Virus record (IMG/VR): IMGVR_UViG_3300025162_000016
Span: 62,001 to 126,000 of that record
Direction: 5' to 3' (one strand)
DNA: 64,000 nt
Below, piece by piece: positions 4,707-61,000 of the stretch. The notes below the pieces were generated by a model. The model made no database searches. It saw only the letters and a list, made by a program, of their open reading frames with translations, and had not been told where the DNA came from. How positions within the stretch are numbered: position 1 is the first letter of the stretch; every line of letters starts with the position of its first letter. Position numbers and translations under genes: made by a program.

Positions 4707-4756
4707 ATTCGCTATTTATACACAAGAAATATACACAGACAAAGAAATACAAATAT

Positions 4757-14034: not shown

Positions 14035-14162
14035 ACATGTCAATCACGGACAGAAAGTCCGATTTCAATATTTCAAGAACAATACGTTTTGGTATTATCA
14101 TAGGTAATTAATTTTATTGTTTTTTATTGTCTTTTCGTGTTTTTTGGTTATATGTATTCTAT

Positions 14163-38510: not shown

Positions 38511-39686
38511 ATGGATAATATACTTTCAGATCAAGATAGCATCAGATTTACCGGCAGTGGTTCTAATCCTGCTGGTAACACTCCTTATGGTTTTTACGAC
38601 AACGACGCAATTTTCCTTACGGAATGTTATAGAGGAATGTTATGGGCATCTAGAAAATTGGGTTATCCGATAACCGACATTGAAATGATTGACATTAATT
38701 TCTACGCCTGTTATGAAGAGGCAGTCAATGAATACGGTAAAGAAGTAAATCAATTTAATATTGTTAACAACATGCTCGTGTTTCAAGGTCAAAATCTTGA
38801 AACTTTAGGTAGTGTAAATGGCAGGAACGTTCAAGGAACCGGTCTTAGTCAAATGATTATGTTGGCGAAGGATTATGGTTCGGAAACCGGTGCTGGTGGT
38901 AGAGTAGATTGGAAACGAGGTTATATCCAAGTTAATGCGGGTATACAAGACTACGATCTTCAGGCATTATGGGGAGATGCTAAAGAAAGCTGTAACAAAA
39001 TGGAAATAAAACGTATATTCCATGACCGACCCCCTGCCTCGGCTCGAATTTATGACCCATTTTCGATGACAGGAATGAGTTATAGTAATGTTTTGACTGA
39101 GCTAGGATTTGGGGCATATTCTCCGGCTGTTCAATTTTTAATGACCCCAATTTTCGAAGATTTGCTTCGGATGCAATCGATTGAATTTAACGATATGGTA
39201 CGTAAATCGGCATATAGTTTTGAGATTGTAAATAATAAAGTAAGGGTATTTCCCATTCCGACATATAGCTATAAGATGTGGTTTGAATATATTCTTGAAA
39301 AAGATAGATTAGAGAGTTTATTATCGGCATCTGGGTCGAATGTAGTATCTGATTACTCGAATGTTCCGTATGTTATGCCTATATATTCCAAGATTAATGA
39401 ACCTGGGAGACAATGGATACGCAATTATTTTCTGGCCTGTTGTAAAGAGACTTTAGGACAAATTCGTTCAAAGTATCAGACTATTCCTATTCCGAATGGA
39501 GAAACTACTCTTAACGGTCCGGAGTTGATTCAGGCGGCACAAACTGAGAAAGAATCACTATTAGAGAATTTGAGATTAATGCTTGAGCAATCGGGGAAAT
39601 TTTATCAATTGGAAAAACAATCTGAATTAACCGAACAAATTAATAATACATTAAAGGGAGTTCCTTTGTATATTTACGTGGGATGA
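38511..39686 (+). CDS. Neck/head-completion protein (gp13-like)
   Basis: KLGYPITDIE, CKETLGQIRSKY..IPIP...LNG, VPLYIYVG. Lies after the head genes. Confidence 0.7.
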   Translation: MDNILSDQDSIRFTGSGSNPAGNTPYGFYDNDAIFLTECYRGMLWASRKLGYPITDIEMIDINFYACYEEAVNEYGKEVNQFNIVNNMLVFQGQNLETLGSVNGRNVQGTGLSQMIMLAKDYGSETGAGGRVDWKRGYIQVNAGIQDYDLQALWGDAKESCNKMEIKRIFHDRPPASARIYDPFSMTGMSYSNVLTELGFGAYSPAVQFLMTPIFEDLLRMQSIEFNDMVRKSAYSFEIVNNKVRVFPIPTYSYKMWFEYILEKDRLESLLSASGSNVVSDYSNVPYVMPIYSKINEPGRQWIRNYFLACCKETLGQIRSKYQTIPIPNGETTLNGPELIQAAQTEKESLLENLRLMLEQSGKFYQLEKQSELTEQINNTLKGVPLYIYVG

Positions 39687-41185
39687 AAGTTTAACTGATA
39701 TTTTGTACACCCGCAATCCCAGATTCTATCCCATCCGTTATTTTTCATATTTTCCCATTCAGAAAGAGCGGGGTTAAAATTTGGGAGTCTATTGGACAGA
39801 GAGTTCTTTTTAAATCCGTATCGATGATATCTTTTAGAGTGATCTTTAGTATAGAAATAATTGGGATTAGTTTCCAATATTTTTGAAAATCCCATTTTGG
39901 AATATATTTCCCCGGTTCCCCATCTTCTATCGGAATAGGAGATAATTTTTTCAGGGGAATAGTTTTTGATAAAGTAATTTAATAATTTTCCAAATCCACC
40001 TATCACGGAGCGATTTATTTTCGAACAGAATCTGTACATTTCCCAATGATTATTTACGGGAACTGATCCAAGAGATTTTCTTAATTTTCCAAATGTCATT
40101 ACAGATATCAACTCATTTTTATAATACAAACCGAGTTTTATTAAGGATGCATCTGATCCTTGCAGGTGATTTTCATTGAGAAATAAATTAGAGTCTACAC
40201 CGGGCACTATTTTAGTTTCACATTTTCTGGCATATATTTTTACGGGAGATGTTTTGAGTATGGATTGCAATCTACTTTTTACAATTTGTTCTTTGAATCT
40301 CCATTCATCTTCAAATATATGGATAAGCCGGATTCCTTTGGTTTGACATTGCAATGTTTTATCGAGATGATATTTCTTTGAAATTCCTCCAGTTAATTGA
40401 CTATGATAGTATAATCCATCAAATTCTATTCCTAATTTATGAGAAGGAATGTAAATATCTATTTCTTTACCGGACAAAATGGTTCTATCATTTTCCTTTA
40501 CATCTATTACATTTAAAGTGGTTTTAATATAATCTATAATATCTTTTTGGCATTTTGAAATATAGTTTGGAAAACAAATTGGACATCGAGGTATATGTCC
40601 ATCTTGGAGATGATTATGAAACAAACTTTTACATAATTTACATTCGAATTTATATGTTAATTCGACCCCCAAGTATTCTTCTTTTGAAAATAATGGGGTG
40701 ACATTTTTATATCTTACATCGGTAAAAAATCTCTCATAATTCTCTTGTAGAATATTTGACCGAATTTCTTTAGATTGAATTGGATAATCGGTTCCATATT
40801 TTTTACGATTGGTTTCTTTTATTTGTTGTTTGCATTTATCCAATTTTAGATTACAATCTTCCCCATAATGTTTTAAGCAAGTTTCTTTCTTTTTCTCTTT
40901 TATGAGAGGAGATATTGATGGATTTTTTACTCCATAAGTTTTTAAACAACTGGCTTCTTTTTTCTGTTTAACATTGGTGGAATTATTGGAACATTTGCGA
41001 GAGCAATACGATCTAAAACCGGAGAATATATCATTTAAAACGGTAATATTTCCGCATTGGATGCAGTTTCCGACATTGATTATTTCCGGATGAATCCATT
41101 TATACAATTTCTCTTTAAAGGAATTTCCGGAAAAGTTAGTTAGAATGGACGAATAACATTCGGGATAATCTCGGCGAATAATCAT
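39674..41185 (-). CDS. Hef-like homing endonuclease with KYG repeats
   Basis: KYG repeats, EIDI..EFDGLYYH, HIFEDEW, RIWDCG. Confidence 0.75.
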   Translation of the reverse strand: MIIRRDYPECYSSILTNFSGNSFKEKLYKWIHPEIINVGNCIQCGNITVLNDIFSGFRSYCSRKCSNNSTNVKQKKEASCLKTYGVKNPSISPLIKEKKKETCLKHYGEDCNLKLDKCKQQIKETNRKKYGTDYPIQSKEIRSNILQENYERFFTDVRYKNVTPLFSKEEYLGVELTYKFECKLCKSLFHNHLQDGHIPRCPICFPNYISKCQKDIIDYIKTTLNVIDVKENDRTILSGKEIDIYIPSHKLGIEFDGLYYHSQLTGGISKKYHLDKTLQCQTKGIRLIHIFEDEWRFKEQIVKSRLQSILKTSPVKIYARKCETKIVPGVDSNLFLNENHLQGSDASLIKLGLYYKNELISVMTFGKLRKSLGSVPVNNHWEMYRFCSKINRSVIGGFGKLLNYFIKNYSPEKIISYSDRRWGTGEIYSKMGFSKILETNPNYFYTKDHSKRYHRYGFKKNSLSNRLPNFNPALSEWENMKNNGWDRIWDCGCTKYQLNFHPT

Positions 41186-44438: not shown

Positions 44439-47400
44439 ATGAGCCACGAATTTGTAGCAAAACGTGGATTAATTTCCCGAGGTGATGTACAAGTTACTGG
44501 TTCGTTAACCGCCACCGGCGTTATTTTCGGACATCATACTGGTTCTACTTTTGGAACGGCTTCTTGGGCAACTAATTCTTTAACCACGTCTTATGCAGAC
44601 TCATTAACTGTTAACAATGATTTAACAGTTGGCGGCATATTACGAGCCGGACAAATTAGTAGTAGTTTTATATATATCACCTCAAGTTATATTGTAGTAA
44701 CTGATAACATACTTACATTAAATGCACAAACTCCTCATGTAAGATACGCCGGGATTGAAGTATGGGATTCGGGTTCTACCGATCAAATGGCGAGTGTTTT
44801 ATGGGATGGCGAGAATAATTACTTCTTTATTTCATCCAGCGATGCGGGATATAGTAAAAAGATTATATTGGGACCGAGTGGTGAAGTAGATTTAACCGTC
44901 GGTAAAATACCTGTAGTAACTACAGGCGATAGTATTGGTGATAGTATAATACAACAAATTGGATCGGAAATCAATATTACGGGCAATTTAGTAGCTACGT
45001 CGGTAACTGCATCATTGATGGGGACGGCATCAAATGCTATTAGTGCGTCCTATGTTCCTAATTTATATCCACAAATTATACAAACCACCGTTGATTCTGC
45101 ATCGTGGGTGAGTGCTTCGGTATTTATCACTACTGCACAAACCGCTTCTTATATCACTTCCAGTAATATTTTTGGTAAGGTAACCGCCTTTAGTTCTTCA
45201 TGGGCAAGTGCTTCGGTTAGTGCATCCTATGTTCCGAATTTATATCCACAAACATATCAAGAATCTGGTTCATGGGCATCTTCATCGATTAGTGCCAGTT
45301 ATTTATTTGGACCTCATACTGGTTCGACATTTGGAACTGCAAGTTGGGCATTATCATCTTCGACTGCGATCAGTGCATCTTATTCGCCAGTAGAACCCGA
45401 TTATAGTTCATCGGTATCGTTACAAATAGATACTAAACAGAACAACATTGTTACCGGTTCAACCTTACCGATAACTGCAAGCTGGGCTAACTATATTTCT
45501 TCCAGCAATATAATTGGTAATGTTACCGCATTTTCTGCTTCGTGGGCGAGTGCTTCAATTAGTGCTTCCTACGTTCCTAATTTATATCCGCAGACGTATC
45601 AGGAGTCGGGGTCATGGGCCAGTGCTTCATTAAGTGCAAGTTATTCTCCGGTTCAACCGAGTTACAGTGCAAGTATTTCCGATCAATTTGCGACTAAACA
45701 AGATACATTAGTAATTGGCAATACTTATTCAATAACAAGTAGTTGGGCAAACGATGCTATTACGGCATCATATATTTCTTCCAGTAATATTTTTGGTAGT
45801 ATTACCGCATTAAGTTCTTCGTGGGCATCTTCCAGTATTTCATCATCTTACGTTCCCAATTTATATCCACAGGTTATACAAACCACCGTTGATTCTGCAT
45901 CATGGGTAAGTGCTTCGGTATTTATTACAACGGCACAGACTGCTTCGTATGTATCTTCCAGCAATGTTATAGGAATAATAACCGCATTTTCTTCCTCTTG
46001 GGCGAGTGCGTCGATCAGTGCTTCCTATGTTCCTAATTTATATCCTCAGACATATCAAGAGTCTGGTTCATGGGCATCATCCAGTATTTCGTCATCGTAT
46101 GCTACATCAGCATCTTACGTTCCCAATTTATATCCACAAGTTACACAAACAACAGTTGATTCGGCGTCATGGGTAAGTGCGTCGGTATTTATTACTACTG
46201 CACAAACCGCTTCTTATATTACGGCCAGTAATATATTTGGAACGGTAACGAGTTCATCGTATGCTTTAAGTGCGTCTTGGTCACCGCAACCGGCAATACC
46301 GACATCAGTTCCTTCCTCTTCATGGGCATCATCCAGTATTTCGGCGTCATATGCATTAACAGCGAGTTTTGCTTTAAATGCATCAGCACTTACATCGGCA
46401 AGTTGGGCAAGTAGTTCTTTAAGTGCATCATATCTTAATGCGGGGGCGAATATATATCTTTCGCAATCATATATTTTTGCTAATACCAATTCAATTGTAC
46501 CGTCATTTAAACCGGGACAATTATGGTATGATTCATTAACTCATACGTATGCGATTGATACTGATAAAACGGATGTTCGTCTTCAGATAGGACAGGAAAA
46601 TTATGTTAGAATTGTGGCGGGAGAATTAATTGCGAATGGAAACGCTGTTTATATTAGCGGGTCGAATATAAACAAACTTCCGATTGCATACCTTGCGATT
46701 GCAGATGGAACGGGATTGAAAAATCTAGTAGTTGGTTTATCAACTCAACCACTAACAATAGGAGAAGAAGGGTTTGCCACTACAGTAGGAGTTGTTAATA
46801 ATATTAACACATCTACCCTAATTGACGGCGATGTATTGTATTTATCTGACGTTACTTCTGGTTCCTTTACAAATATTATACCATTATTTCCTGCTGAAAA
46901 AGTAATTGTTGGAACGGTTTTATATTCTGGAATATCCGGAAAGATTTTAGTAGATTTGAGTCAACACACTCCTCGGGAAGATTTCAGTGTTGGGGTAATA
47001 GATATTCCTACGTTATCTAATATTGGCAGTACGATTTATATTGGGGCATCTAAAGTTAATTTCTGTATTAATTTATCCGGAAAAGGTATTATACGTTCAT
47101 TTACAGTTCCCTCCGCATCATTTACGATTACAACGGCGTTTTTGGATGTTCAATATATTCTTGCGAATTATAATAATGGCAATCCGATTTATCAGATTGC
47201 GACGGATATGTCAACGGTAGATAACATTCAAACTGTTCCGGTAGCCACATTTACATTGGGGTCGGGTGGAAATTTTTCTTATGTAGATTGGGACTCTTCC
47301 GGATTATTATTAAGCAACAAACTTGAACGTCGTATTATTGATATTTATGGTGCTCAACGAGCAAGTGGATTAGAAATAGGAACCAGCGGTTCTCATATTA

Positions 47401-50400
47401 CTATTACATCCGGAACGGGATATCTTGGAGTTAAGCAATTAACATTTACTAGTTCAAGTACTGCCAATACAAATCAATTTGCATTAGTAGCACATTCCGC
47501 ATCGATTTGGTCGGGATCTTTTATTAATGGGTATGTAACTACTCATTATGATGATGGCATCAATTTACGAACTCTTGGATCGGGTAAATATGTTGTAAAT
47601 TATGTTTATCGTGGAATTGGATCACTCAATCGATCTCAGGTATTGTTGAGCCCGCAATATGTCAATTACGGGGATGCGGTCAAGGCAATAATGCCTATTC
47701 CACCGGCTGAATTATCGAGCATTTCTATTTTTTGTGGACGCATAATAACACAAGAAGGAGATGGGGCATTATTGGTTGAGAGTGCATTTACAACTATTCT
47801 TTCGGTGGCGGGTATTACTGATCACAATTTATTAAATAATATACAAGGTGGAACACCGGGTCAATATTATCATTTATCATCGGCAAGTTACGCTCAGATG
47901 ATAAATGGGACTGCAAGTTATGCATATACTGCTAGTTATATATCTTCCAGTAATATATTCGGGAATATAACTGCATTTAGTGCTTCGTGGGCATCGGCTA
48001 GTATTTCGGCATCTTATGTTCCTAATTTATATCCACAGACATATCAAGTGTCTGGTTCGTGGGCATCATCATCGATTAGTTCGAGTTATTTATTTGGTTC
48101 ACATACCGGCTCTACTTTTGGTACGGCGAGTTATGCATATACTGCTAGTTATATATCTTCAAGTAATATATTTGGTAATGTAACCGCATTCAGTGCTTCG
48201 TGGGCATCGGCCAGTATTTCGGCGTCATATGTTCCTAATTTATATCCGCAAACTTTTCAAGCATCGGGGAGTTGGGCAAGCAGCTCTTTAAGTGCAAGTT
48301 GGGCACAATCTGCATCAATTGCATCAACAGCTAGTTATGTATCTTTCAGCAATATTTTTGGTAATGTAACTGCATTTTCCGCATCATGGGCATCGGCTAG
48401 TATTTCTTCATCGTATACTTTAAAATCATATTGGAATGATATTACTAAAGAGCCATCTGGATTTCCAAACCGGACAGATTCCACTCTTAGTTATGACAGT
48501 GCTTCGGTTAAATTAATGATATCGGGATCGAACTGGAAGGTTTATTGTAATGGCAATGAATTTATTAAAAATAATGAATCCATTGTTATTTCTACACCGA
48601 CCAAAGGACAGTTATATTATATTTATTATGATACGAATGGGGTATTACAACAAGCAGTAAGTGAATGGAGTTTTGTATCTGGAATTGCTTCCGTTTGCAC
48701 GGTATATATTGGGGCAGGGGCGGGTAATGGATTTGTTTCGGATGAACGGCATGGGGTTTTAATGGACGGGATGACCCATGAATATTTGCATGAGACAATG
48801 GGGCCGAGGTATGCTTCTGGATTTGCGTGGACGACAACGACAGCTTCGCTTGGAAAATATGCAATATCAGCGGGGGAATGGTATGATGATGATCTTGAAT
48901 TTAAGACTACCACTATTTTAAGTAGCAGTTTGATGGCATATTATTCGGGAGCGATGGTAGTATCTACAACGGAGACGAGTTCGATGTATGGGGGAGGAAC
49001 TGAAAAATATAATAACACTACATTAGGTACATTGGTAAATATTACGGGGGGTAATGCTGGGTGTTTCTTCATATATGCTATTAATGGGATTAGCAACAAT
49101 TTAGTATCGATATATGGGCAGAGGATTGACACTAGTGTTGCGAATGCTCGGACGAACAATACACCGGACACTTTAATATTTGGTAATTTCCCATTTCGGG
49201 AGGCGAAGTTATTATATCGTGTAATTGTGACGACGGCGGGTATTTCCGAGACCACGGATTACCGAACCGCACAATATGCTGGGTCTACATTTACACCTAC
49301 GTCACATGGATCGTTGACTGGGTTAAGTAATGATGATCATCCGCAATATCTTTTATTAGCGGGTAGAGATGGGCAAGCGGCGGCTACGTTTACGGGATCT
49401 ATAGTTGGCAGTTCTTCATATGCGACGAGTGCTTCGTATGTTCCGAATTTATATCCACAGACATATCAAGTATCGGGGAGTTGGGCAAGTAGTTCTTTAA
49501 GTGCGAGTTATATATCTTCCAGCAATATTTTTGGTAATGTAACTGCTTTCTCTGCTTCGTGGGCATCTTCTTCAATTAGTGCATCCTATGCTCCGGTTCA
49601 ACCATCATACAGTGCGAGTATTTCTACACAATTCGGAACTAAACAAGATACCCTTGTAACTGGTAATACTTATTTTATTACATCCAGTTGGTCGATAAGT
49701 TCAAGTTATGCACCAAATCTTTATCCACAAACTTATCAGATAAGTGGAAGTTGGGCATCTGCTTCAATAAGTGCATCCTATGCAACGATGGCTGGAACAG
49801 CGAATGCGATTTCCTTTGTTCCTCTAACATCGACTAGTGCCTCTTGGGTATCTGCTTCCGTTTTTATTACAACCGCACAGACTGCATCTTATATTACATC
49901 TAGTAATATTGTAGGAATAATAACTGCTATCAGTGCAAGTTGGTCAAGTGCCTCAATTAGTGCATCATATGCACCGGTTCAACCAAGTTATTCTTCCAGT
50001 GTATCCACTCAATTTGGAACCAAACAGGATACTCTTGTAACTGGAACCACTTATTTCATTACATCAAGTTGGTCACTTAATTCAATAACTACATCTTATA
50101 TTACGTCGAGTAATATTGTGGGAATAATAACTGCATTTAGTTCTTCTTGGGCTAGTTCTTCAATCAGTGCTAGTTACGTTCCCAATTTATATCCTCAGAC
50201 AGAACAAACATCCGCTTCGTGGGCTTCTAGTTCGATTAGTGCAAGTTATTTATTTGGACCGCATACGGGATCGACTTTTGGAACTTCAAGTTGGTCACTT
50301 AATTCAATAACTACTAGTTATATTACTTCCAGTAATATTGTGGGAATAATAACTGCATTTTCTGCCTCTTGGGCATCTTCTTCATTGAGTGCTTCATATG

Positions 50401-51566
50401 TTCCTAATTTATACCCACAAACAGAACAGATATCATCAAGTTGGGCTAGTGCATCTATAAGTGCAAGTTATTTATTTGGACCGCATACAGGATCTACTTT
50501 TGGAACATCTTCTTGGTCTAACAATTCCGTAACTGCATCTTATATTACTTCAAGTAATATTTTCGGTAATGTTACCGCATTTAGTTCATCTTGGTCAAGT
50601 GCATCAATTAGTGCTTCATATGCAATAAGTGCTAGCATCGCTAATGCAATTTCTTTTGTTCCTATTGCTAGTGTAAGTGCATCATGGGTAAGTGCATCTG
50701 TATTTATTACAACTGCACAAACTGCATCTCATATTACATCCAGCAATATTTTTGGAATTGTAACTAGTGCTTCTTACAGTTTCTCATCCTCGTATTCATT
50801 AACATCTAGTTATTTGAGTAGTTCAGTTATGGGAAATGGTGTATATAATATCGTATATCTCAATAGTGCAAGTTATGCCGCATTAAATCCTCCTGTATCA
50901 ACTACAATTTATGCGGTAATGTCCGAAAACTTTCGAGTTACAGAAATTGATGATTTAAGAATTACAGAAGATGGTGATATAAGAATTACACAATTAGGAA
51001 ATATTGTATTATATTTAGGATTGAATCCGATTTCAAGTGGTGAGAATATTATATCTTGTTCGTGGGCATCTTCTTCAATTAGTTCCAGTTATTTATTTGG
51101 ACCACATACAGGATCAACTTTCGGAACGGCATCTTGGGCAGTGAGTGCATCTTGGGCTGGTAATATTGCTGCTTCTGGATTTCCAACGATAATAGCATCA
51201 GGAAATTATAATACATATCCACAAGGAACAGATGTAATTATTATGACAGAATTAGCAACTATATCTAATACTGGGTTGTATAGAATATCTGATACTTGTA
51301 ATACTTATTTAACTTCTGCCGCCGCCATTTACTTCACTCGTAGTGTTGTTTGGTCGGATGAGACAAATACTAGACGTACTAGAAATTCAATCCAGTTTCC
51401 TACTTATGCCATTGGTGAGAGACCAGGTTTTTATGGTAATTGGGCCAATGATGTTTTTACTTTATCTATATTAACCGGAACTAAAGTATCTATAACAGAA
51501 AGTTATACTTGTAACGTACAAACAGATGCCTTTCATAGTAAGATTGCATTGGAAAGATTATTTTAA
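44439..51566 (+). CDS. Long tail fibre (2375 aa) with SASWASSS / YVPNLYPQT repeats
   Basis: Three Ser/Ala/Thr repeat blocks separated by globular domains; DHPQY-type motif. Confidence 0.75.
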   Translation: MSHEFVAKRGLISRGDVQVTGSLTATGVIFGHHTGSTFGTASWATNSLTTSYADSLTVNNDLTVGGILRAGQISSSFIYITSSYIVVTDNILTLNAQTPHVRYAGIEVWDSGSTDQMASVLWDGENNYFFISSSDAGYSKKIILGPSGEVDLTVGKIPVVTTGDSIGDSIIQQIGSEINITGNLVATSVTASLMGTASNAISASYVPNLYPQIIQTTVDSASWVSASVFITTAQTASYITSSNIFGKVTAFSSSWASASVSASYVPNLYPQTYQESGSWASSSISASYLFGPHTGSTFGTASWALSSSTAISASYSPVEPDYSSSVSLQIDTKQNNIVTGSTLPITASWANYISSSNIIGNVTAFSASWASASISASYVPNLYPQTYQESGSWASASLSASYSPVQPSYSASISDQFATKQDTLVIGNTYSITSSWANDAITASYISSSNIFGSITALSSSWASSSISSSYVPNLYPQVIQTTVDSASWVSASVFITTAQTASYVSSSNVIGIITAFSSSWASASISASYVPNLYPQTYQESGSWASSSISSSYATSASYVPNLYPQVTQTTVDSASWVSASVFITTAQTASYITASNIFGTVTSSSYALSASWSPQPAIPTSVPSSSWASSSISASYALTASFALNASALTSASWASSSLSASYLNAGANIYLSQSYIFANTNSIVPSFKPGQLWYDSLTHTYAIDTDKTDVRLQIGQENYVRIVAGELIANGNAVYISGSNINKLPIAYLAIADGTGLKNLVVGLSTQPLTIGEEGFATTVGVVNNINTSTLIDGDVLYLSDVTSGSFTNIIPLFPAEKVIVGTVLYSGISGKILVDLSQHTPREDFSVGVIDIPTLSNIGSTIYIGASKVNFCINLSGKGIIRSFTVPSASFTITTAFLDVQYILANYNNGNPIYQIATDMSTVDNIQTVPVATFTLGSGGNFSYVDWDSSGLLLSNKLERRIIDIYGAQRASGLEIGTSGSHITITSGTGYLGVKQLTFTSSSTANTNQFALVAHSASIWSGSFINGYVTTHYDDGINLRTLGSGKYVVNYVYRGIGSLNRSQVLLSPQYVNYGDAVKAIMPIPPAELSSISIFCGRIITQEGDGALLVESAFTTILSVAGITDHNLLNNIQGGTPGQYYHLSSASYAQMINGTASYAYTASYISSSNIFGNITAFSASWASASISASYVPNLYPQTYQVSGSWASSSISSSYLFGSHTGSTFGTASYAYTASYISSSNIFGNVTAFSASWASASISASYVPNLYPQTFQASGSWASSSLSASWAQSASIASTASYVSFSNIFGNVTAFSASWASASISSSYTLKSYWNDITKEPSGFPNRTDSTLSYDSASVKLMISGSNWKVYCNGNEFIKNNESIVISTPTKGQLYYIYYDTNGVLQQAVSEWSFVSGIASVCTVYIGAGAGNGFVSDERHGVLMDGMTHEYLHETMGPRYASGFAWTTTTASLGKYAISAGEWYDDDLEFKTTTILSSSLMAYYSGAMVVSTTETSSMYGGGTEKYNNTTLGTLVNITGGNAGCFFIYAINGISNNLVSIYGQRIDTSVANARTNNTPDTLIFGNFPFREAKLLYRVIVTTAGISETTDYRTAQYAGSTFTPTSHGSLTGLSNDDHPQYLLLAGRDGQAAATFTGSIVGSSSYATSASYVPNLYPQTYQVSGSWASSSLSASYISSSNIFGNVTAFSASWASSSISASYAPVQPSYSASISTQFGTKQDTLVTGNTYFITSSWSISSSYAPNLYPQTYQISGSWASASISASYATMAGTANAISFVPLTSTSASWVSASVFITTAQTASYITSSNIVGIITAISASWSSASISASYAPVQPSYSSSVSTQFGTKQDTLVTGTTYFITSSWSLNSITTSYITSSNIVGIITAFSSSWASSSISASYVPNLYPQTEQTSASWASSSISASYLFGPHTGSTFGTSSWSLNSITTSYITSSNIVGIITAFSASWASSSLSASYVPNLYPQTEQISSSWASASISASYLFGPHTGSTFGTSSWSNNSVTASYITSSNIFGNVTAFSSSWSSASISASYAISASIANAISFVPIASVSASWVSASVFITTAQTASHITSSNIFGIVTSASYSFSSSYSLTSSYLSSSVMGNGVYNIVYLNSASYAALNPPVSTTIYAVMSENFRVTEIDDLRITEDGDIRITQLGNIVLYLGLNPISSGENIISCSWASSSISSSYLFGPHTGSTFGTASWAVSASWAGNIAASGFPTIIASGNYNTYPQGTDVIIMTELATISNTGLYRISDTCNTYLTSAAAIYFTRSVVWSDETNTRRTRNSIQFPTYAIGERPGFYGNWANDVFTLSILTGTKVSITESYTCNVQTDAFHSKIALERLF

Positions 51567-51637
51567 ATTATATGGAATACATTTCACTGAAATATATCTA
51601 TTTATAAGAGATTACAAAAAATGAAATACGCCGAATT

Positions 51638-53035
51638 ATGTCAAATACACGAATAAGCAATTTAAATGCCGCTGGAACAATCACTGGAACCGAATTGATT
51701 GAATTAGTCCAAACCGGTACGTCAGTATATTCTACAATCAATAGTATAGCATCTACTACCACCGCCAGTTTATTGGGCGGTAATCCAAATGAATGGTTTA
51801 TAAAAGATGATATAACTCTGCCAGCTTTTGCTACCACTAATTCACAATCAATGGTCGTTAATAGTAATTTATTAATTTATATAAATAACAAACCGTATAC
51901 ATTTACTAGTGCTAGTAGCACCATTATAATGCCCGCTCTAATGCTCGCTGGAAATGATTATGGTATCTATGCTACTACCGCAAGTACTTTAATCGCTACC
52001 TATACCAATACCAGTTCCATTGAGTTAGGTGGTTATACTGCTCCTGCTGGATACGATGCCACTAACTCCAGATTAGTCGGCGGCTTCTACTTCGCTCATT
52101 CTGGCAGTGCCCCACTGTCAATGATCAGTAGATCTAGATCTGCAGGCGGTGCTGCAGCCTCCGCTTCAATCTCTATGAGTAGTGCTGCTCATGGTTTAGT
52201 TACTGGTGACTATATTGATGTAATATTGATGACCGATTTAACTTATAATACCACAAATATTCCCATCACCGCAAGTGGAACAAATATTATATTCCCAAGT
52301 TCAGGAACATCCGAAACATATGTCGGTGACACTGCCGGTAAAGTATACAAAATAAATAATCGGGGCATCATTAATCAATATAGTATCTGGGATCTAAAAT
52401 TCAAACCAAAATGCCCAGATCCCCGTGGTATGATATTAGTTAATGATTCCTTCTGGGTTGATATCTGGCTAACTGGTAATAACTATCTAACCAGTGGAAC
52501 CAGCAGAAAAGGTGAGAGAATTGCGGATGGTCAAGGCGGTGTATCGTATCCTCTAATTTCAACAAAAATGGGCGGAAATGGTACATCTAGATACGCAAAC
52601 TGCACTTGGTTCACCTCAAATGAAGTACTTGCTCACTGGGGAAAGAAACTTCTGAGTTATGCTGATTTCTGTGTTGCTGCTTTCAATGGAACAACAGAGA
52701 ATGGATCATATGGAACAGATAATCAGTATACCTGTAGACCTCCTGGTGCAATGTATACCAGCAAATGGGGAATGGAGCAATCCTATGGAATCATGTGGAT
52801 ATGGGGTGCAGATTTGAATTTTTATTCGGGAACAATTAACTATGATTGGCAGAATACTACTGAAGGCAGAGGTTATATGTACACAACATCCACAGGAACG
52901 ATTGCAGGTATATACGGCGGCAGTTGGAATGATGGTGTTGCTGGCTCTCGTAGTTCTTATTGGCATGATTATGTTTGGGATAGCAACTACAGTATTGGGC
53001 TGCGTGGTCGTTGTGATCATCTTGTTGTTCCGTAA
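51638..53035 (+). CDS. DGR target 1, Mtd-like receptor-binding protein (CLec fold)
   Basis: INQYSIWDLKF, DPRGM.LV..FWVDI, TSKWG, GRCDHL resemble Bordetella BPP-1 Mtd. C-terminal VR. Confidence 0.9.
   Translation: MSNTRISNLNAAGTITGTELIELVQTGTSVYSTINSIASTTTASLLGGNPNEWFIKDDITLPAFATTNSQSMVVNSNLLIYINNKPYTFTSASSTIIMPALMLAGNDYGIYATTASTLIATYTNTSSIELGGYTAPAGYDATNSRLVGGFYFAHSGSAPLSMISRSRSAGGAAASASISMSSAAHGLVTGDYIDVILMTDLTYNTTNIPITASGTNIIFPSSGTSETYVGDTAGKVYKINNRGIINQYSIWDLKFKPKCPDPRGMILVNDSFWVDIWLTGNNYLTSGTSRKGERIADGQGGVSYPLISTKMGGNGTSRYANCTWFTSNEVLAHWGKKLLSYADFCVAAFNGTTENGSYGTDNQYTCRPPGAMYTSKWGMEQSYGIMWIWGADLNFYSGTINYDWQNTTEGRGYMYTTSTGTIAGIYGGSWNDGVAGSRSSYWHDYVWDSNYSIGLRGRCDHLVVP
52910..53012 (+). repeat. 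DGR variable repeat VR1
   Basis: Differs from TR only at TR adenines, plus one 3-nt deletion. Confidence 0.93.
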
Positions 53036-53119
53036 CGGAGCGGAAGCGAAGTGGGAGGAACAACAGTAGCATTTCTGGTAGTATAGAAGAAAAATTTGGT
53101 ATAAATAAAAATAAATAAT

Positions 53120-54499
53120 ATGGCAACGAAAAAAATAAGTGAATTAAATGTAGCTGGTACTATTGGTGGTAATGAGATGGTGGAATTGGTACAGAGTGGA
53201 TTATCTGTACGATCTACAGTTAGTAATATAATAATTACTGCCAGTGTAGTGAACGGTAATACCAACAATTTTTTTGTTAAATTAAATTATAAAACGCCAG
53301 CATTTGCTACTAATAATTCTCAATCAATGGTGGTAAATAGTAATTTATTAATCTATGTAAATAATACCCCGCACAATTTTGCCAGCGGCTCTTCTATCAC
53401 CATGCCCGCCACTATGCTCGCCGGAAATGACTACGGTATCTATGCCACCATCGATAATACCCTGATAGCTACGTATACCACTCCCAGTTCCGTGACTCTC
53501 GGAGGTTATACCGCTCCTGCTGGATATAATGCCACTAACTCCAGATTAGTCGGTGGCTTCTACTTTGCCCATTATGATAGCTCACCGCTCTCAATTCTCG
53601 GAAGATCTAGATCGTCTGGTAATTCTTCAATCTCTATGAGCAATGCTGTTCATGGTTTAGTTACTGGTGACTATATTGATGTAATCCTAATGACCGATCT
53701 AACTTATAATATCGTAAATGTTCAAATTACTGTGAGCGGTACCACTATAACTTTCCCAAATCCAGGATCAAATGAATCATATACCGCAGATACCGCCGGT
53801 AAAGTATACAAAATAAATAATCGGGGCATCATTAATCAATATAGTATCTGGGATCTAAAATTCAAACCAAAATGCCCAGATCCCCGTGGTATGATATTAG
53901 TTAATGATTCCTTCTGGGTTGATATCTGGCTAACTGGTAATAACTATCTAACCAGTGGAACCAGCAGAAAAGGTGAGAGAATTGCGGATGGTCAAGGCGG
54001 TGTATCGTATCCTCTAATTTCAACAAAAATGGGCGGAAATGGTACATCTAGATACGCAAACTGCACTTGGTTCACCTCAAATGAAGTACTTGCTCACTGG
54101 GGAAAGAAACTTCTGAGTTATGCTGATTTCTGTGTTGCTGCTTTCAATGGAACAACAGAGAATGGATCATATGGAACAGATAATCAGTATACCTGTAGAC
54201 CTCCTGGTGCAATGTATACCAGCAAATGGGGAATGGAGCAATCCTATGGAATCATGTGGATATGGGGTGCAGATTTGAATTTTTATTCGGGAACAATTAA
54301 CTATGATTGGCAGAATACTACTGAAGGCAGAGGTTATATGTACACAACATCCACAGGAACGATTGCAGGTATATACGGCGGCGGTTGGACTGATGGTGGT
54401 GTTGCTGGCTCTCGTAGTTCTTATTGGTATGATTATGTTTGGGATAGCAACTACAGTATTGGGCTGCGTGGTCGTTGTGATCATCTTGTTGTTCCGTAA
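53120..54499 (+). CDS. DGR target 2, Mtd-like receptor-binding protein
   Basis: Paralog of target 1; C-terminal half looks identical outside the VR. Confidence 0.9.
   Translation: MATKKISELNVAGTIGGNEMVELVQSGLSVRSTVSNIIITASVVNGNTNNFFVKLNYKTPAFATNNSQSMVVNSNLLIYVNNTPHNFASGSSITMPATMLAGNDYGIYATIDNTLIATYTTPSSVTLGGYTAPAGYNATNSRLVGGFYFAHYDSSPLSILGRSRSSGNSSISMSNAVHGLVTGDYIDVILMTDLTYNIVNVQITVSGTTITFPNPGSNESYTADTAGKVYKINNRGIINQYSIWDLKFKPKCPDPRGMILVNDSFWVDIWLTGNNYLTSGTSRKGERIADGQGGVSYPLISTKMGGNGTSRYANCTWFTSNEVLAHWGKKLLSYADFCVAAFNGTTENGSYGTDNQYTCRPPGAMYTSKWGMEQSYGIMWIWGADLNFYSGTINYDWQNTTEGRGYMYTTSTGTIAGIYGGGWTDGGVAGSRSSYWYDYVWDSNYSIGLRGRCDHLVVP
54371..54476 (+). repeat. DGR variable repeat VR2
   Basis: 106 nt, colinear with TR. 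About 16 mismatches, all at TR adenines. Confidence 0.95.
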
Positions 54500-54551
54500 C
54501 GGAGCGGAAGCGAAGTGGGAGGAACAACAGTGGCATTTTTTGTGATTTATT

Positions 54552-54902
54552 ATGGATGAAAATATAAAACAACTTGAAATTATTGAAAAATACGAAGAAT
54601 TTGTTAATTATATTTATCCAATTTGTATAAATATTCCTAAAGGTGGGCATGTAACATTGAGGAATAAGATGACCGAATGTATATTTAACCAAGTGGAATT
54701 ATTTGTACAAGCGAAAAAATCTAATCAAATATCAAAACTTTACTTAGCAGATGCGGGATTGGCTCTGTTGAGATTTTATTTACGGTTTCTGGTTCACCCA
54801 AACCGAAAACTTATAAGCAACAATCAACATAAAGTAGCAACATTGCATTTGTGTGAGGTTGAGAATATGTTAAAGGAATGGATAAAAACTATGAAGCCGT
54901 GA
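54552..54902 (+). CDS. avd: DGR accessory variability determinant
   Basis: 116-aa helical protein between target and TR (SKLYLADAGLALLRFYLRF). Confidence 0.85.
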   Translation: MDENIKQLEIIEKYEEFVNYIYPICINIPKGGHVTLRNKMTECIFNQVELFVQAKKSNQISKLYLADAGLALLRFYLRFLVHPNRKLISNNQHKVATLHLCEVENMLKEWIKTMKP

Positions 54903-54917
54903 TGGGTTGATTGTGTA

Positions 54918-55023
54918 AAAAACGGCGGCAATTGGAATAATGGTAATATTGCTGGCTCTCGTAGTTCTAATTGGAATAATTATGTTTGGAATAACAACAA
55001 CAATATTGGGCTGCGTGGTCGTT
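54918..55023 (+). ncRNA. DGR template repeat (TR)
   Basis: AAT/AAC-rich copy of the VRs between avd and RT; the 3' IMH* diverges (CGTTTTGTGACG vs CGTTGTGATC). Confidence 0.93.
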
Positions 55024-55216
55024 TTGTGACGATACGATGTATTTTTGGAATTTTTTGTTTCTATATGATTACGGTTATATAGACAAGACCAATAATTATG
55101 TTTGAGAAATAACAACAAATGGTCAGCATAATCATCCTGCGATAAGCAAACAAATAACGGGCAAATTGTGGTGAATAGTAGAGGGTGAACTCAAATTTCA
55201 CCACAATTTATTTTCT

Positions 55217-56215
55217 ATGGGTAAAAAATATAAAAATCTAATACATTTGGTGGTAGATGACGATAATTTACGTAAAGCATATGAACAAGCAAGAAAAAAC
55301 AAACGATATAAGAGAGGGGTGTTAATATTCAAGGAAAGATTGGAATATAATTTACAACAGATCAAAAAAGAGATTTTAGAAAAAACATATAAAATTGGTG
55401 CATATAAAGATTTTACGATATATTATCCAAAAGAAAGAAAAATCTCGGCTCTACCATTCAAAGATAGAGTAGTTCAACATGCATTATGTAATATTATAGA
55501 ACCTATATTTGATAGATATATGTTTTCCTGTAGTTATGCTTGTAGGAAAGGAAAAGGAACGCACCGATGCATGATGAAAGCAAGGGATATAATCCGTGCG
55601 GTACCAAAAAATAAACCATTGTTCTTTCTAAAAATGGACTTTAGAAAATTCTTCCCTTCCATAAACAAAGAAATATTATATAAAGAAATAAATCGAAAAA
55701 TAAAAGATAAACATATCATGTGGTTATTACATCAAATAATACCACCTATTGGAAATGGGCTTCCTATCGGTAATCTAACCAGTCAATTATTTGCCAATGT
55801 TTACGGAACTATTTTCGACAGATATATAAAACAATTTCTGCGAGTAAAACATTATGTCAGATATATGGATGACACCGTTATTATATCCACCGATAAAGCA
55901 TATCTTATATCAACTCTCCAAAAAATAACGTGGTTTATAAAAAATATATTAAAATTAGAATTCTCCAAATGGTACATAGAAAATATTAAAAAAGGACTTA
56001 ATTTCGTGGGTTATAGAATATTTAGATCTCACATTCTTATCAGAAAATCGTCAGTGGTTAGATGTAAAAGAAAAATTCAATCCTATTTATACCACGAGAA
56101 GTACAAAGAATTGTACAGATCGCTAATAAGTTGGAGTGGACATATTAAATGGTCAAACTCATACAATTTAGGACAACATATAGAAAGACAAATACAATTA
56201 TGGCAAATGAATTAG
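55217..56215 (+). CDS. DGR reverse transcriptase
   Basis: PFKDRVVQHA, KMDFRKFFPSI, GLPIGNLTSQLFAN, YVRYMDD, NFVGY. Confidence 0.95.
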   Translation: MGKKYKNLIHLVVDDDNLRKAYEQARKNKRYKRGVLIFKERLEYNLQQIKKEILEKTYKIGAYKDFTIYYPKERKISALPFKDRVVQHALCNIIEPIFDRYMFSCSYACRKGKGTHRCMMKARDIIRAVPKNKPLFFLKMDFRKFFPSINKEILYKEINRKIKDKHIMWLLHQIIPPIGNGLPIGNLTSQLFANVYGTIFDRYIKQFLRVKHYVRYMDDTVIISTDKAYLISTLQKITWFIKNILKLEFSKWYIENIKKGLNFVGYRIFRSHILIRKSSVVRCKRKIQSYLYHEKYKELYRSLISWSGHIKWSNSYNLGQHIERQIQLWQMN

Positions 56216-58008: not shown

Positions 58009-61000
58009 ATGCCAATCCCGATTTCAACTTTTTTCGAGTTAAGTACCGAATTACCCATTGATAATAGAATTGTTGCGGCTAATATCTCTATAAGAAATGC
58101 GATCACAGATACATGGAGATTTGAAGGATTGCATTGTTATGTAGTCGATGAACAAATAAATTATCAATTACAAGGCGGTATTTTAAATACCGATTGGGTT
58201 GTTTTAAATGCAGGTGGAACTGCGGAATCCGCATCATGGGCTAGCAGTTCTTTAAGTTCAAGTTATTTATTAGGATCACATACCGGTTCTACTTTCGGTA
58301 CAGCAAGTTGGGCAGTATCCGCTTCATGGTCTCCTGCTCAACCATCTTCAACGGCAGAATCCGCATCATGGGCTAGTTCATCTATCAGCGCCAGTTATTT
58401 ATTCGGTCCACATACCGGTTCTACTTTTGGTACTGCAAGTTGGGCAGTATCGGCTTCGTGGTCTCCTAGTCAACCATTTTCAACAGCAGAATCGGCATCA
58501 TGGGCAAGTAGTTCTTTAAGTTCAAGTTATTTATTTGGTCCACATACCGGTTCTACTTTTGGAACCGCATCATGGGCACTTAATTCGTTAACGGCTAGTT
58601 ATATTTCTTCCAGTAATATCACCGGCGATATTACTGCGTTTAGCGCCTCATGGGCATCGAGTTCAATTAGCGCATCATATGCATTATCTTCATCCTGGAC
58701 AATTAATGCGAGTACTGCAAGTAATTCTTTAACGGCGTCATATCTTACTCCTGAAAATAATTACACCGTTCATAATTTAGATATTACTAATAATCTTACG
58801 AATGGAACGGGATCAATTGCAAACAGTCTTGTTTCTCATGCGGAAGGTTATTTTACAATTGCAAATGGGTATGCATCTCATGCGGAAGGAGATTCTACTA
58901 CAACCATCGGGATATCTTCTCATGCGGAAGGCGAATCTGCCACTGCAACCGGTAATTTTTCTCATGCCGAAGGTAAAACCACCAATGCAATTGGAAATTA
59001 TTCCCATGCAGAAGGTCAAAACACACAAGCATATAAAGATTATTCTCATGCCGAAGGTTATGGCACATGGGCAAGCCAAATATATTCTCATGCGGAAGGC
59101 AATTCTACCGTAGCAATTGGAACCGGTTCGCATGCCGAGGGCGACGTTACAACTGCGGCTGGAAATTTTTCTCATACCGAAGGAGATTCTACTACTGCAA
59201 ACACAAACCATTCTCATGCGGAAGGTTCATTTACTATTACGAATGGAGTGGCGTCTCATGCCGAAGGAGAATCTACAACTACAGATGGACATTATTCCCA
59301 TGCCGAAGGTGGTTCTACAAAAACATTCGGACCGTATTCCCATGCGGAAGGTTATAATACAATTGCACGGTCATGGGGGTCTCATGCCGAGGGTGCTTTT
59401 ACGATGGTGTCTGAAATTAGTGACGGAGCACATGCGGAAGGACTAGAAACAACTGCATCGGGACAAAGTTCTCATGCGGAAGGATTTGGTTCAGTTACAA
59501 CCACAAATTTTTCTCATGCCGAGGGCGATCATACTACTGCGAATGGCCAAAGCTCTCATACAGAGGGTAAAAATACAATAGCAAATGGAAAGAGTTCCCA
59601 TGCCGAAGGTTATTTTACAATTGCCACCAATGATTTTTCCCATGCGGAAGGTATGAACACGGAGGCATATGAAGAGGGTTCTCATGCGGAAGGAGGCGGT
59701 ACATCTACACTGGGAGTTGGTTCTCATGCGGAAGGCGCTTCCACAACTGCAACTGGACATTATTCTCATGCGGAAGGTGATACTACATATGCAAATGGAG
59801 CGGCTTCTCATGCGGAAGGTGGATCTACATTCGCAAATGGAGTTAGTTCTCATGCGGAAGGTTATTATACAACTGCAATTGGAGATTATTCCCATGCGGA
59901 AGGTGGATCTACATTCGCAAATGGAAATTATTCTCATGCAGAAGGTTATAGTACAACTGCAACTGGAGAATTTTCTCATGCGGGAGGTAATAATACAGTA
60001 GCATACGCTAATTATCAAACAGTCGTAGGACGATTTAATATTGCTAATAACAGCACCGATTTATTTGTAGTTGGCGGTGGTGCAAATGATGCAAACAGAA
60101 AAGACATATTAAAAGTATCTACCACCGGTGTTATTGTAAATGGTGGCGTCACTTCTTCATTATTTGGAACCGCATCATGGGCACTTAATTGTTTAACTGC
60201 GAGTTATACTTCTGCCAGCAATATTACCGGAAACATTACCGCCTTTAGTTCTTCCTGGGCATCAAGTTCATTGAGTTCTTCCTACGCCTTATCCGCCTCT
60301 TATGCATTATCGGCATCGTATGCATTAACAAGTAGTTACGCCAATTCAGCTTCTTATGCATTATCTTCATCTTATGCATTAACTGCGAGTTATATTTCCA
60401 GTGCATTTGCGATCGTAGGAACAGCATCTTATGCTTATAATGCGGGGACGGCATCATGGGCATGGAATTTAATTGGAGGATTACCGTCAATAGAATCGGC
60501 CTCTTGGGCATCATCGAGTTTATATTCTATTGGAGCAATTTATGCATCCAGTTCAATTAGTTCCAGTTGGGCATCCTCATCGATTAGTTCGAGTTATTTA
60601 TTTGGATCACATACCGGCTCTACATTTGGAACTGCAAGCTGGGCATTTAATGCTTTAACGGCTAGTTATATTTCTTCCAGTAATATTGCCGGAAATGTTA
60701 CCGCATTCAGTGCGAGTTGGGCATCTGCTAGTATTTCCGCAAGTTATTTAAATGGATCACACACTGGTTCTACCTTTGGGACTGCAAGTTGGGCAGTATC
60801 CGCTTCATGGGTAAGTGCCTCTACATTTATTACAACAGCACAAACAGCTTCATATGTATCTTCCAGTAATATTTTCGGTAATATAACTGCATTTAGTGCA
60901 TCTTGGGCATCATCTAGTATATCATCCAGTTATTTATTTGGACCGCACACTGGTTCAACATTTGGTACATCGTCTTGGGCAATTAATGCTACTACTGCAT

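What the first reader, a model, noticed from the sequence alone, without database searches (positions are those of the whole stretch)
51638..56215. Complete BPP-1-type DGR with two tandem Mtd-like targets in a large T4-like phage
The order is target1, target2, avd, TR, RT. VR/TR mismatches fall only at TR adenines (AAT/AAC codons). Both targets resemble Bordetella Mtd but add an N-terminal (R/K)IS(N/E)L..AGTI.G.E..ELVQ docking-type segment and an inserted HGLVTGDYI domain. One TR could diversify two receptor-binding tips. DGRs are best known from temperate phages, so one in a gp23-type large phage is notable.
Basis: partly seen in the sequence, partly recalled or inferred. Interest (0 to 1): 0.65.

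Follow-up and report, generated by a model that had tools for sequence, protein, structure and literature searches.

The report
Active DGR in a jumbo phage
A complete 369-kb T4-like phage carries a Bordetella-phage-type retroelement that rewrites the receptor-binding tips of two tandem tail proteins; near-identical strains from other samples differ almost only at those tips, so it has been active recently, in a phage size class where such elements are not reported in the sources I checked.

Summary
Window 51638-56215 holds target1, target2, avd, TR and RT, in the BPP-1 order. Both targets match Bordetella phage Mtd (PDB E 2.6e-53; Foldseek E 6.5e-30). VR2 differs from TR at 17 of 109 positions, 16 of them TR adenines. 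VR1 shows the same pattern but lacks one AAT codon.

The host genome is a complete 368,758-bp phage with direct terminal repeats. It has T4-type capsid, portal and sheath genes and no lysogeny-type integrase.

A contig from another project gave the test instead. It matches 8,062 window bases with 55 differing columns: 51 lie in the two VRs and 4 outside. 24 of the 25 in VR2 are at TR adenines, and the TR is identical. So the element was active recently.

Relatives carry one to three tandem targets. Some have clearly different VRs served by one TR. In this strain the last ~700 nt of the two targets are identical except at four TR-adenine sites, which points to gene conversion or assembly collapse.

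A common sister strain lost avd, TR and the RT 5' end where a TnpB gene now sits.

Verdict: a new member of a known kind, in an unusual host phage.

The parts
51638..53035 (+). Target 1, Mtd-like variable protein (465 aa). N-terminal ~53 aa of unknown fold, Mtd beta-sandwich domain, ~80-aa inserted beta-barrel, then the C-type-lectin-fold domain ending in VR1.
   Evidence: Pfam mtd_2nd 3.8e-10. PDB Mtd 1yu2 E 2.6e-53 in two stretches. AF2 pLDDT 83.9; Foldseek top Mtd E 6.5e-30, TMt 0.77. PHROG tail protein 2.5e-72.
52910..53015 (+). VR1, 106 nt. It is TR minus one AAT codon, with 12 substitutions at TR adenines.
   Evidence: The same VR1 haplotype, with the codon deletion, is seen in all three targets of L088.
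53023..53065 (+). 9-bp inverted repeat (53023-53031 / 53057-53065) spanning the target-1 stop codon. Candidate counterpart of the hairpin/cruciform that marks a BPP-1 VR as recipient.
   Evidence: DNA fold of the identical copy after VR2 (z-score -0.75, not significant). Conserved in L006, L008 and L087 with one T-to-C change that makes a G-T pair.
53120..54499 (+). Target 2, Mtd-like paralogue (459 aa). The first two thirds are 62-88% identical to target 1 at nucleotide level. The last ~700 nt are identical except inside the VR.
54371..54479 (+). VR2, 109 nt, colinear with TR. 16 substitutions at TR adenines plus T>G at the 3' boundary.
54487..54529 (+). Second copy of the 9-bp inverted repeat (54487-54495 / 54521-54529) spanning the target-2 stop codon.
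54552..54902 (+). avd, accessory variability determinant (116 aa).
   Evidence: Pfam bAvd 8.6e-28. NCBIfam DivGenRetAVD 91.9 bits against a cut-off of 80. PHROG 'Avd protein of DGR'.
54918..55026 (+). TR, template repeat. 33 adenines, 32 of them at codon positions 1-2 of the VR frame. The 3' end diverges from the VRs after GGTCGTT (IMH* versus IMH).
   Evidence: The TR is 100% identical in strain L089, whose VRs differ.
55027..55216 (+). TR-RT spacer, the presumed Sp part of the DGR RNA. It has two conserved hairpins.
   Evidence: Sub-threshold, full-length match to Rfam Phage_DGR RF03022 at 55077-55207 (26.2 bits, gathering score 50). Both hairpins keep pairing through compensatory changes in L006-L008.
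55217..56215 (+). DGR reverse transcriptase (332 aa) with IGNLTSQ and YMDD motifs.
   Evidence: Pfam RVT_1 7.3e-18. 43% identity to BPP-1 Brt over 98% of its length. It is the only RT in the genome. The motifs are read from the translation.
44439..51566 (+). Context: a 2375-aa Ser-rich repetitive fibre-like protein immediately upstream of target 1.
   Evidence: The orthologue in sister strain L090 carries a Peptidase_S74 tail-fibre chaperone domain.

Best explanation
This is a functional BPP-1-type diversity-generating retroelement inside the fibre-gene cluster of a complete, probably virulent, 369-kb T4-like jumbo phage.

Inferred mechanism, by analogy with BPP-1. The avd-TR-spacer-RT region is transcribed. 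The RT-Avd complex copies the TR into cDNA and misreads adenines. The cDNA then replaces the last ~109 nt of an Mtd-like target gene. Direction is set by the G/C-rich 3' end of the VR, which differs from the TR end, and possibly by the inverted repeat downstream.

Because TR adenines lie at codon positions 1-2 of AAY codons, about 15 codons of the lectin-fold ligand-binding face are randomised without creating stop codons.

The lineage carries a tandem array of one to three Mtd-like paralogues, all with the same recipient signals. One TR can therefore retarget several receptor-binding tips.

In this strain group the 3' ~700 nt of the paralogues, VR included, are kept nearly identical, most likely by gene conversion between the tandem copies.

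Shown: the anatomy, the homology, the A-specific TR/VR pattern, VR-restricted divergence between near-identical strains, and multi-target relatives.
Inferred: the biochemical steps, the receptor-binding role, a virulent lifestyle, and gene conversion.
For: - All parts are present and intact. The order is the same as BPP-1.
- The targets are Mtd homologues by sequence and by fold.
- In six TR/VR pairs of this lineage, 111 of 120 substitutions are at TR adenines. Six of the other nine are the shared boundary T>G.
- Strain L089 (ENA) matches window 47160-55221 with 55 differing columns. 26 are in VR1, 25 in VR2 and 4 outside. 24 of the 25 in VR2 are at TR adenines, and the TR is identical.
- Protein P0001 equals target 1 at 414 of 414 aligned residues outside the VR and differs at 15 positions inside it.
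- Clusters of orthologues at >=90% identity hold several VR haplotypes each.
- L102 has 2 targets and L104 has 3. Each has one TR and one RT, and the VRs differ from each other at TR adenines.
- Both window targets share identical sequence from ~52370/53831 to 53067/54531, which includes the VR 3' end and the inverted repeat.
- The genome is a complete record with direct terminal repeats, 368,758 bp. It has Gp23 capsid, T4 portal and sheath genes.
- There is no tyrosine integrase. The only Resolvase-domain ORFs are ~205 aa. The one that lies in this window sits directly upstream of a TnpB gene, which is an IS607-type arrangement.
Against: - Within-population variation at VR1 and VR2 in this sample was therefore not seen.
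- VR1 and VR2 of this genome share most of their substitutions and differ at only four TR-adenine sites. That is not what two independent full-length homing events would give.
- Within each of three assemblies of this strain group, the paralogue VRs are identical or nearly so. A de Bruijn assembler could produce this by collapsing a 700-nt repeat.
- VR1 is one codon shorter than TR.
- L089's VRs carry one change at a TR thymine.
- The Rfam match to the DGR RNA family is below its gathering score.
- The VR-proximal hairpin is not energetically significant.
- Host, virion location and binding are unknown.
Confidence: 0.85

Rival explanations
1. The cassette was active in the recent past of the lineage but is silent or very slow in this particular genome. 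On this view the two VRs are a fixed haplotype copied between paralogues, and the one-codon deletion in VR1 is ordinary decay.
For: VR1 and VR2 share at least 11 identical substitutions. The VR1 haplotype, including the codon deletion, recurs unchanged in all three targets of a second assembly from another project. VR2 is identical in contig L005. A sister strain has truly lost the DGR and is the most widely sampled form.
Against: RT, Avd, TR and both recipient ends are intact. A strain 99.9% identical outside the VRs, with the same TR, has about 25 A-site changes per VR. The four differences between VR1 and VR2 are the only differences in ~700 nt, and all lie at TR-adenine positions.
Confidence: 0.12
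2. The near-identity of VR1 and VR2, and of the last 700 nt of the two genes, is an assembly artefact. The two genes are real. Their shared 3' repeat was collapsed and written twice, so the true VRs of the two paralogues may be quite different.
For: The repeat is ~700 nt of perfect identity, longer than short reads. Contig L005 starts at window 54260, inside the repeat, which fits a possible assembly break there. In three assemblies of this strain group the paralogue VRs are the same or nearly so. Two substitutions outside the VR appear in both copies in parallel.
Against: The window assembly did keep four differences between VR1 and VR2. At least one of them, 52964/54428, lies 104 nt from the first unique downstream base. 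In L102 an assembler resolved two very different VRs behind a ~300-nt perfect repeat. This rival concerns only VR phasing and does not affect the existence or activity of the DGR.
Confidence: 0.3
3. The A-site pattern reflects diversifying selection on ordinary point mutations in a receptor-binding loop. On this view the RT and TR are unrelated or defunct.
For: Receptor-binding tips of phages are often hypervariable without any DGR.
Against: 111 of 120 substitutions are at TR adenines in six pairs. A non-coding TR copy with A at every variable site is conserved in relatives. The avd-TR-RT synteny equals BPP-1. Flanking synonymous sites are unchanged: 4 differences in ~7,800 nt.
Confidence: 0.01

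Closest known systems
Bordetella phage BPP-1 tropism-switching cassette (mtd - bbp7/avd - TR - brt)
   Same: Same gene order and similar spacing. The RT is 43% identical to Brt. The targets are 39-40% identical to Mtd over the beta-sandwich and lectin-fold domains, with the VR at the extreme C-terminus. The mismatches are adenine-specific. The VR 3' end is G/C-rich and differs from the TR end. There is an inverted repeat after the VR.
   Different: - The host phage is a 369-kb T4-like myovirus, not a 42-kb temperate podovirus.
- There are two (in relatives one to three) tandem targets instead of one.
- The N-terminal ~53 aa are unrelated to the start of Mtd.
- An ~80-aa beta-barrel is inserted between the sandwich and lectin domains.
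- The TR is ~109 nt against 134 nt.
- The inverted repeat has a 9-bp stem and a 25-nt loop, and is weak.
Metagenomic phage DGRs, including multi-target ones (Roux et al. 2021, PMC8144416; tentaclin paper, PMC10743442; slurry virome, PMC7981956; crAss-like phages)
   Same: Phage-encoded DGRs that diversify tail proteins with lectin-fold VRs. More than one VR per RT is known. DGRs on apparently lytic phages are known.
   Different: All DGR-RT carriers that I saw listed among deposited phage records are <=137 kb. The lists cover roughly 85 of the 151 hit records. A survey of 224 jumbo phages found no DGR-type lectin (FGS) domain (PMC7824862). I could not find this contig in the held supplements of Roux et al..
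T4-like phages nearest by capsid: Microcystis phage Mel-JY01, Flavobacterium immuto phages, uncultured huge phage LR756508 (484 kb)
   Same: Major capsid protein 51-52% identical. Gp23 family.
   Different: None of these three genomes has a homologue of the RT. The cassette is therefore not a trait of the wider clade and was probably acquired horizontally (inference).

Membership tests
Diversity-generating retroelement, BPP-1 (Mtd/Avd) type | Reverse transcriptase of the DGR clade | tested here: met
   RVT_1 7.3e-18. Best deposited match is BPP-1 Brt, 43% over 98% of the length. IGNLTSQ and YMDD are read in the translation. NCBIfam has no DGR-RT model; it gave only below-cut-off hits to group II, retron and Drt models.
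Diversity-generating retroelement, BPP-1 (Mtd/Avd) type | Avd accessory protein next to the TR | tested here: met
   NCBIfam DivGenRetAVD equivalog, 91.9 bits against a cut-off of 80. Pfam bAvd 8.6e-28. The gene ends 15 nt before the TR.
Diversity-generating retroelement, BPP-1 (Mtd/Avd) type | TR/VR pair whose differences lie at TR adenines | tested here: met
   VR2: 16 of 17. VR1: 12 of 13 plus one codon deletion. Six pairs in the lineage: 111 of 120.
Diversity-generating retroelement, BPP-1 (Mtd/Avd) type | VR at the C-terminus of a C-type-lectin-fold variable protein | tested here: met
   Sequence match to Mtd E 2.6e-53. The model matches Mtd structures at E 6.5e-30, then TaqVP.
Diversity-generating retroelement, BPP-1 (Mtd/Avd) type | Recipient signals at the VR 3' end (IMH differing from IMH*, downstream hairpin/cruciform) | tested here: inconclusive
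   The G/C-rich shared end is followed by VR/TR divergence that is conserved in all relatives. A 9-bp inverted repeat is present and conserved, but the fold z-score is -0.75. Function was not tested.
Diversity-generating retroelement, BPP-1 (Mtd/Avd) type | Structured spacer RNA between TR and RT (Rfam Phage_DGR) | tested here: inconclusive
   Full-length match at the right place and strand, but 26.2 bits against a gathering score of 50. Two hairpins show compensatory changes, though in only four sequences.
Diversity-generating retroelement, BPP-1 (Mtd/Avd) type | Mutagenic homing actually occurs | tested here: met
   Indirect but strong. Strains that are nearly identical differ in 51 of 55 columns inside the two VRs, with an identical TR. 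There are several VR haplotypes per orthologue cluster. Biochemistry is not testable here.
T4-like (Gp23-type) jumbo myovirus | Gp23 capsid, Gp20-type portal, contractile sheath, genome >200 kb | tested here: met
   Pfam Gp23 1.5e-71 and Portal_T4 1.7e-64. Phage_sheath_1 above its cut-off. 368,758 bp, direct terminal repeats, CheckV 100%.
Temperate phage | Integrase or other lysogeny module | tested here: not met
   No PF00589 match in the genome, although the control genomes rang. The three Resolvase-domain ORFs are ~205 aa. The one in this window directly precedes a TnpB gene, an IS607-like layout. Repressor and partition genes were not searched.

The most novel reading that the evidence does not exclude
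In this jumbo-phage lineage the DGR works on a tandem, copy-number-variable array of one to three Mtd-like fibres. Frequent gene conversion between the paralogues spreads a newly selected VR, together with its lectin scaffold, to all copies, so the phage switches all its diversified tips together. In more distant relatives the copies diversify independently. The system can also be lost: in the most widely sampled sister strain, avd, TR and the RT 5' end are missing where a TnpB gene now sits. This would be the first described DGR of a jumbo phage, and a natural series running from active multi-target, through concerted, to dead.
Probability: 0.3. Interest if true: 0.65.

Novelty: new member of a known kind. 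Interest (0 to 1): 0.5.

Why it matters
DGR biology rests mostly on a 42-kb temperate Bordetella phage and on catalogues of fragments. This case is a complete, probably virulent, 369-kb T4-like genome.

It offers three things:
- An intact cassette close enough to BPP-1 that the known biochemistry should transfer.
- Two to three tandem targets that share one template.
- Natural comparators: near-identical strains with different VRs, strains with one, two or three targets, and a strain that has lost the DGR where a TnpB gene now sits.

That set makes several questions testable with existing metagenomes. How fast does a lytic phage retarget its tips? Are multiple tips diversified independently or in concert? 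What happens to a lineage after it loses the DGR?

The Mtd scaffold here also tolerates an ~80-aa domain insertion and a foreign N-terminus. That is useful to know for engineering Mtd-type binders.

Tried and rejected
No run ids were available, so read laying could not be used.
- Exact-pattern scans for VR variants (TR adenines written as N) found only this contig, its twin L005 and one 1.3-kb relative.
- N-terminal 'docking' segment. No other ORF of the genome shares it (blastp). A word search restricted to residues 1-52 found only its own cluster. Atlas features gave scores <=0.88, which are leads only. Pfam found nothing. The AF2 model has pLDDT <50 for residues 1-47. The role stays untested. 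Other Mtd-like homologues carry different N-termini, which fits modular exchange but does not prove docking.
- Inserted domain. Pfam found nothing. Folded alone it reaches pLDDT 73 and forms a seven-strand beta structure. Foldseek gave no hit below E 0.2. VIA-align gave a best Z of 5.8 to the ubiquitin-E1 FCCH barrel, tied with FAD-binding and efflux-adaptor barrels. Atlas listed a viral E1_FCCH cluster at 0.78. Conclusion: a small beta-barrel, possibly FCCH-like, not established.
- The TnpB that sits at the DGR deletion site in the sister strain is only 28% identical to the window's TnpB at 20378-21514. It is not the same element.
- The held supplements of Roux et al. 2021 have no entry for this contig or its samples. 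The files may be truncated.
- The record names of the ENA contigs (BUCK21-1 ...) suggest the stratified-lake data set of 10.1101/2020.11.12.379446. I could not confirm the sample accessions.
- A prophage or cellular origin was rejected, because the record is a complete phage genome with terminal repeats.
- No complex prediction was run. No claim here depends on one.


Full report
**What is there.**
Target 1 is at 51638-53035, target 2 at 53120-54499, avd at 54552-54902 and the RT at 55217-56215. A 109-nt template repeat lies at 54918-55026.
- The TR has two cognate copies at the 3' ends of the targets: VR1 52910-53015 and VR2 54371-54479. A DNA search of the whole genome finds only these three copies.
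- Pfam gives mtd_2nd for both targets, bAvd for the small ORF and RVT_1 for the RT. NCBIfam places the small ORF above the curated cut-off of the DGR Avd equivalog.
- The RT carries the IGNLTSQ and YMDD motifs (read). It is the only RT in the genome.

**TR/VR pattern.**
- VR2 is colinear with TR. It differs at 17 of 109 positions. Sixteen are TR adenines. The seventeenth is a T>G at TR 55024, where homology between VR and TR ends.
- VR1 lacks one AAT codon. In codon register it has 12 adenine-site changes and the same boundary T>G.
- 32 of the 33 TR adenines lie at codon positions 1 or 2.
- After GGTCGTT the VRs and the TR diverge in the same way in every relative examined. This is what an IMH/IMH* pair looks like.
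- A 9-bp inverted repeat spans each target's stop codon (53023-53031/53057-53065 and 54487-54495/54521-54529). It is conserved in relatives but is not energetically significant.

**The targets.**
- Target 1 matches the solved Mtd variants of Bordetella phage BPP-1 at E 2.6e-53 in two stretches. Residues 54-158 align with Mtd 57-150, and residues 240-464 with Mtd 157-380.
- An AlphaFold model built on 53 homologues has mean pLDDT 83.9 and pTM 0.83. Its best structural matches are the five Mtd entries (E about 1e-29, TM 0.77 on the target). TaqVP, another DGR variable protein, comes next.
- Residues 1-47 are modelled with pLDDT below 50.
- Residues about 155-242 form an extra domain, which is present only in the ~20 closest homologues. 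It replaces a 13-aa loop of ordinary Mtd-like proteins. Two other homologues carry a different ~140-aa insert at the same point.
- Folded alone, the insert is a small beta-barrel without a significant structural match. The best is Z 5.8 to the ubiquitin-E1 FCCH barrel, tied with other barrels.
- The N-terminal motif is shared by the closest homologues but by no other ORF of this genome. Searches found nothing informative. Its 'docking' role remains a guess.

**The spacer RNA.**
- The 190-nt TR-RT spacer gives a full-length but sub-threshold match to the Rfam family of phage DGR RNAs, on the right strand (26.2 bits; gathering score 50).
- Two hairpins keep their pairing through compensatory changes in three relatives.

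**The phage.**
- The window is bases 62001-126000 of a 368,758-bp IMG/VR record with direct terminal repeats. CheckV rates it 100% complete.
- It encodes a Gp23-family capsid protein, a T4-type portal that carries an intein, and a tail sheath.
- The nearest capsid proteins (51-52%) are those of Microcystis phage Mel-JY01, the Flavobacterium immuto phages and an uncultured 484-kb phage. None of these three genomes has an RT homologue.
- There is no tyrosine integrase.
- The three Resolvase-domain ORFs are about 205 aa. The one in this window sits directly before a TnpB gene, which is an IS607-type layout.
- The cassette lies between giant repetitive fibre-like genes.
- Gene order and spacing equal those of the BPP-1 cassette. 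BPP-1 also supplies the closest deposited RT (43%) and target (39-40%).

Contigs from other projects gave the test instead.
- L089 is an 8,065-nt ENA scaffold that aligns with window 47160-55221. There are 55 differing columns: 26 in VR1, 25 in VR2 and 4 elsewhere. The TR is identical.
- In VR2, 24 of the 25 differences are at TR-adenine positions. That is about 23% divergence in the VRs against 0.05% outside.
- At protein level, P0001 equals target 1 at all 414 aligned residues outside the VR and differs at 15 positions inside it.
- Orthologue clusters of related phages hold up to five VR haplotypes among six members.
- Over six TR/VR pairs of the lineage, 111 of 120 substitutions are at TR adenines.

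**One template, several targets.**
- L088 is 99% identical to the window over about 10 kb and has three tandem targets.
- L102, from a 139-kb contig, has two targets, one TR and one RT. Its two VRs differ from each other, each with 21 adenine-site changes. They lie behind a ~300-nt stretch where the paralogues are identical.
- L104 has three well-diverged targets with three different VRs and one TR.
- A tandem array served by one TR is therefore the rule in this group, and independent diversification of the copies does occur.

**What is odd in this genome.**
- The last ~700 nt of targets 1 and 2 (52370-53067 and 53831-54531) are identical, except for three substitutions and one codon indel. 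All of these are in the VR and all are at TR-adenine positions.
- The two VRs share at least 11 identical substitutions, so they are copies of one another rather than products of separate homing events.
- The same holds in L088, where three identical VRs carry the VR1 haplotype with its codon deletion. It also holds in L089, which has two identical VRs. Two substitutions outside the VR changed in both copies in parallel.
- Either gene conversion between the tandem copies spreads a VR with its scaffold, or short-read assemblers wrote a collapsed repeat twice. I cannot decide this without long reads.
- The mosaic structure of L088 target 1 shows that the paralogues do recombine.
- I have no good explanation for how four adenine-site differences arose between two otherwise identical VRs.

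**A natural loss.**
- A sister strain (L090-L093) is 95-98% identical in the flanks and has a single target. A 1.27-kb segment encoding a TnpB on the opposite strand replaces window 54565-55570. That removes avd, the TR and the first 118 codons of the RT.
- Its exact target protein is on record in 35 contigs. Its VR still shows the adenine-only pattern against the window's TR.

**Known or new.**
- DGRs in phage metagenomes are catalogued by the tens of thousands (PMC8144416). Several VRs per RT are known (PMC10743442). DGRs on lytic phages have been reported (PMC7981956) and occur in crAss-like genomes. The mechanism is therefore of a known kind.
- Every DGR-RT carrier that I saw listed among 50,697 deposited phage records is 137 kb or smaller. 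The lists are not exhaustive.
- A survey of 224 jumbo phages reported no DGR-type lectin domain (PMC7824862).
- I rate it a new member of a known kind in an unusual host, with a useful set of natural comparators.

Noticed in passing
L090:10401-11666 (also L091-L093); corresponds to window 54565-55570: In a widely sampled sister strain, a 1.27-kb segment encoding a TnpB on the opposite strand replaces avd, the TR and the first 118 codons of the RT. That strain keeps a single target with a VR that can no longer be rewritten. The exact target protein is on record in 35 contigs.
   Followed up: partly
window 52370-53067 versus 53831-54531: About 700 nt of perfect identity between the two tandem targets, with a sharp boundary upstream. 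The only differences are four events at TR-adenine positions of the VR. This is either gene conversion or assembly collapse. The origin of the four differences is unexplained.
   Followed up: partly
L088:7070-11374: A 99%-identical strain has three tandem targets. Its first target is a mosaic of the window's target 1 (N-terminus) and a target-3-like middle part, so copy number and composition of the array vary by recombination.
   Followed up: partly
L104:7001-8728: The middle of the three targets in a more distant relative has several non-adenine, mostly synonymous, differences from the TR inside the VR. It may not have been overwritten for a long time.
   Followed up: no
window 570-4706 and 4664-7723: Inteins. 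A 1378-aa ORF carries LAGLIDADG and intein-splicing domains; its host protein was not identified. The T4-type portal protein is also interrupted by an intein.
   Followed up: no
window 10598-12292 (+), 25932-27605 (-), 39674-41185 (-): Three paralogous 500-560-aa HNH homing endonucleases (PHROG 3339, E 1e-114 to 1e-124) are scattered through the structural region.
   Followed up: no
window 14127-15946 and 20378-21514 (-): An IS607-like pair (a 202-aa Resolvase-domain ORF followed by a 404-aa TnpB) and a separate 378-aa TnpB. The genome has three such small Resolvase-domain ORFs.
   Followed up: partly
window 27825-29252: A 475-aa acidic protein with [10 protein letters not shown]-type repeats lies just upstream of the capsid gene, in a local G+C peak (0.48 against ~0.35). 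It has no family match and may be a scaffold or core protein.
   Followed up: no
window 33044-35482: An 812-aa ORF combines a NUDIX hydrolase region and a thymidylate-kinase-like region (PHROG hits).
   Followed up: no
window 44439-51566 and 58009-64000: Giant Ser-rich fibre-like proteins with 222-nt, 150-nt and 132-nt tandem units. The second protein also has 42-nt units that encode an SHAEG-type 14-aa repeat.
   Followed up: no
window 55058-55120: A sub-threshold match to the Rfam RT-9 motif (28 bits; gathering score 46) overlaps the first conserved hairpin of the TR-RT spacer.
   Followed up: no
L103 (Ga0209083_1000268, 82.9 kb): The metagenome that yielded this genome (3300025162) also holds a second, related phage contig with Mtd-like targets of the L102 type.
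   Followed up: no
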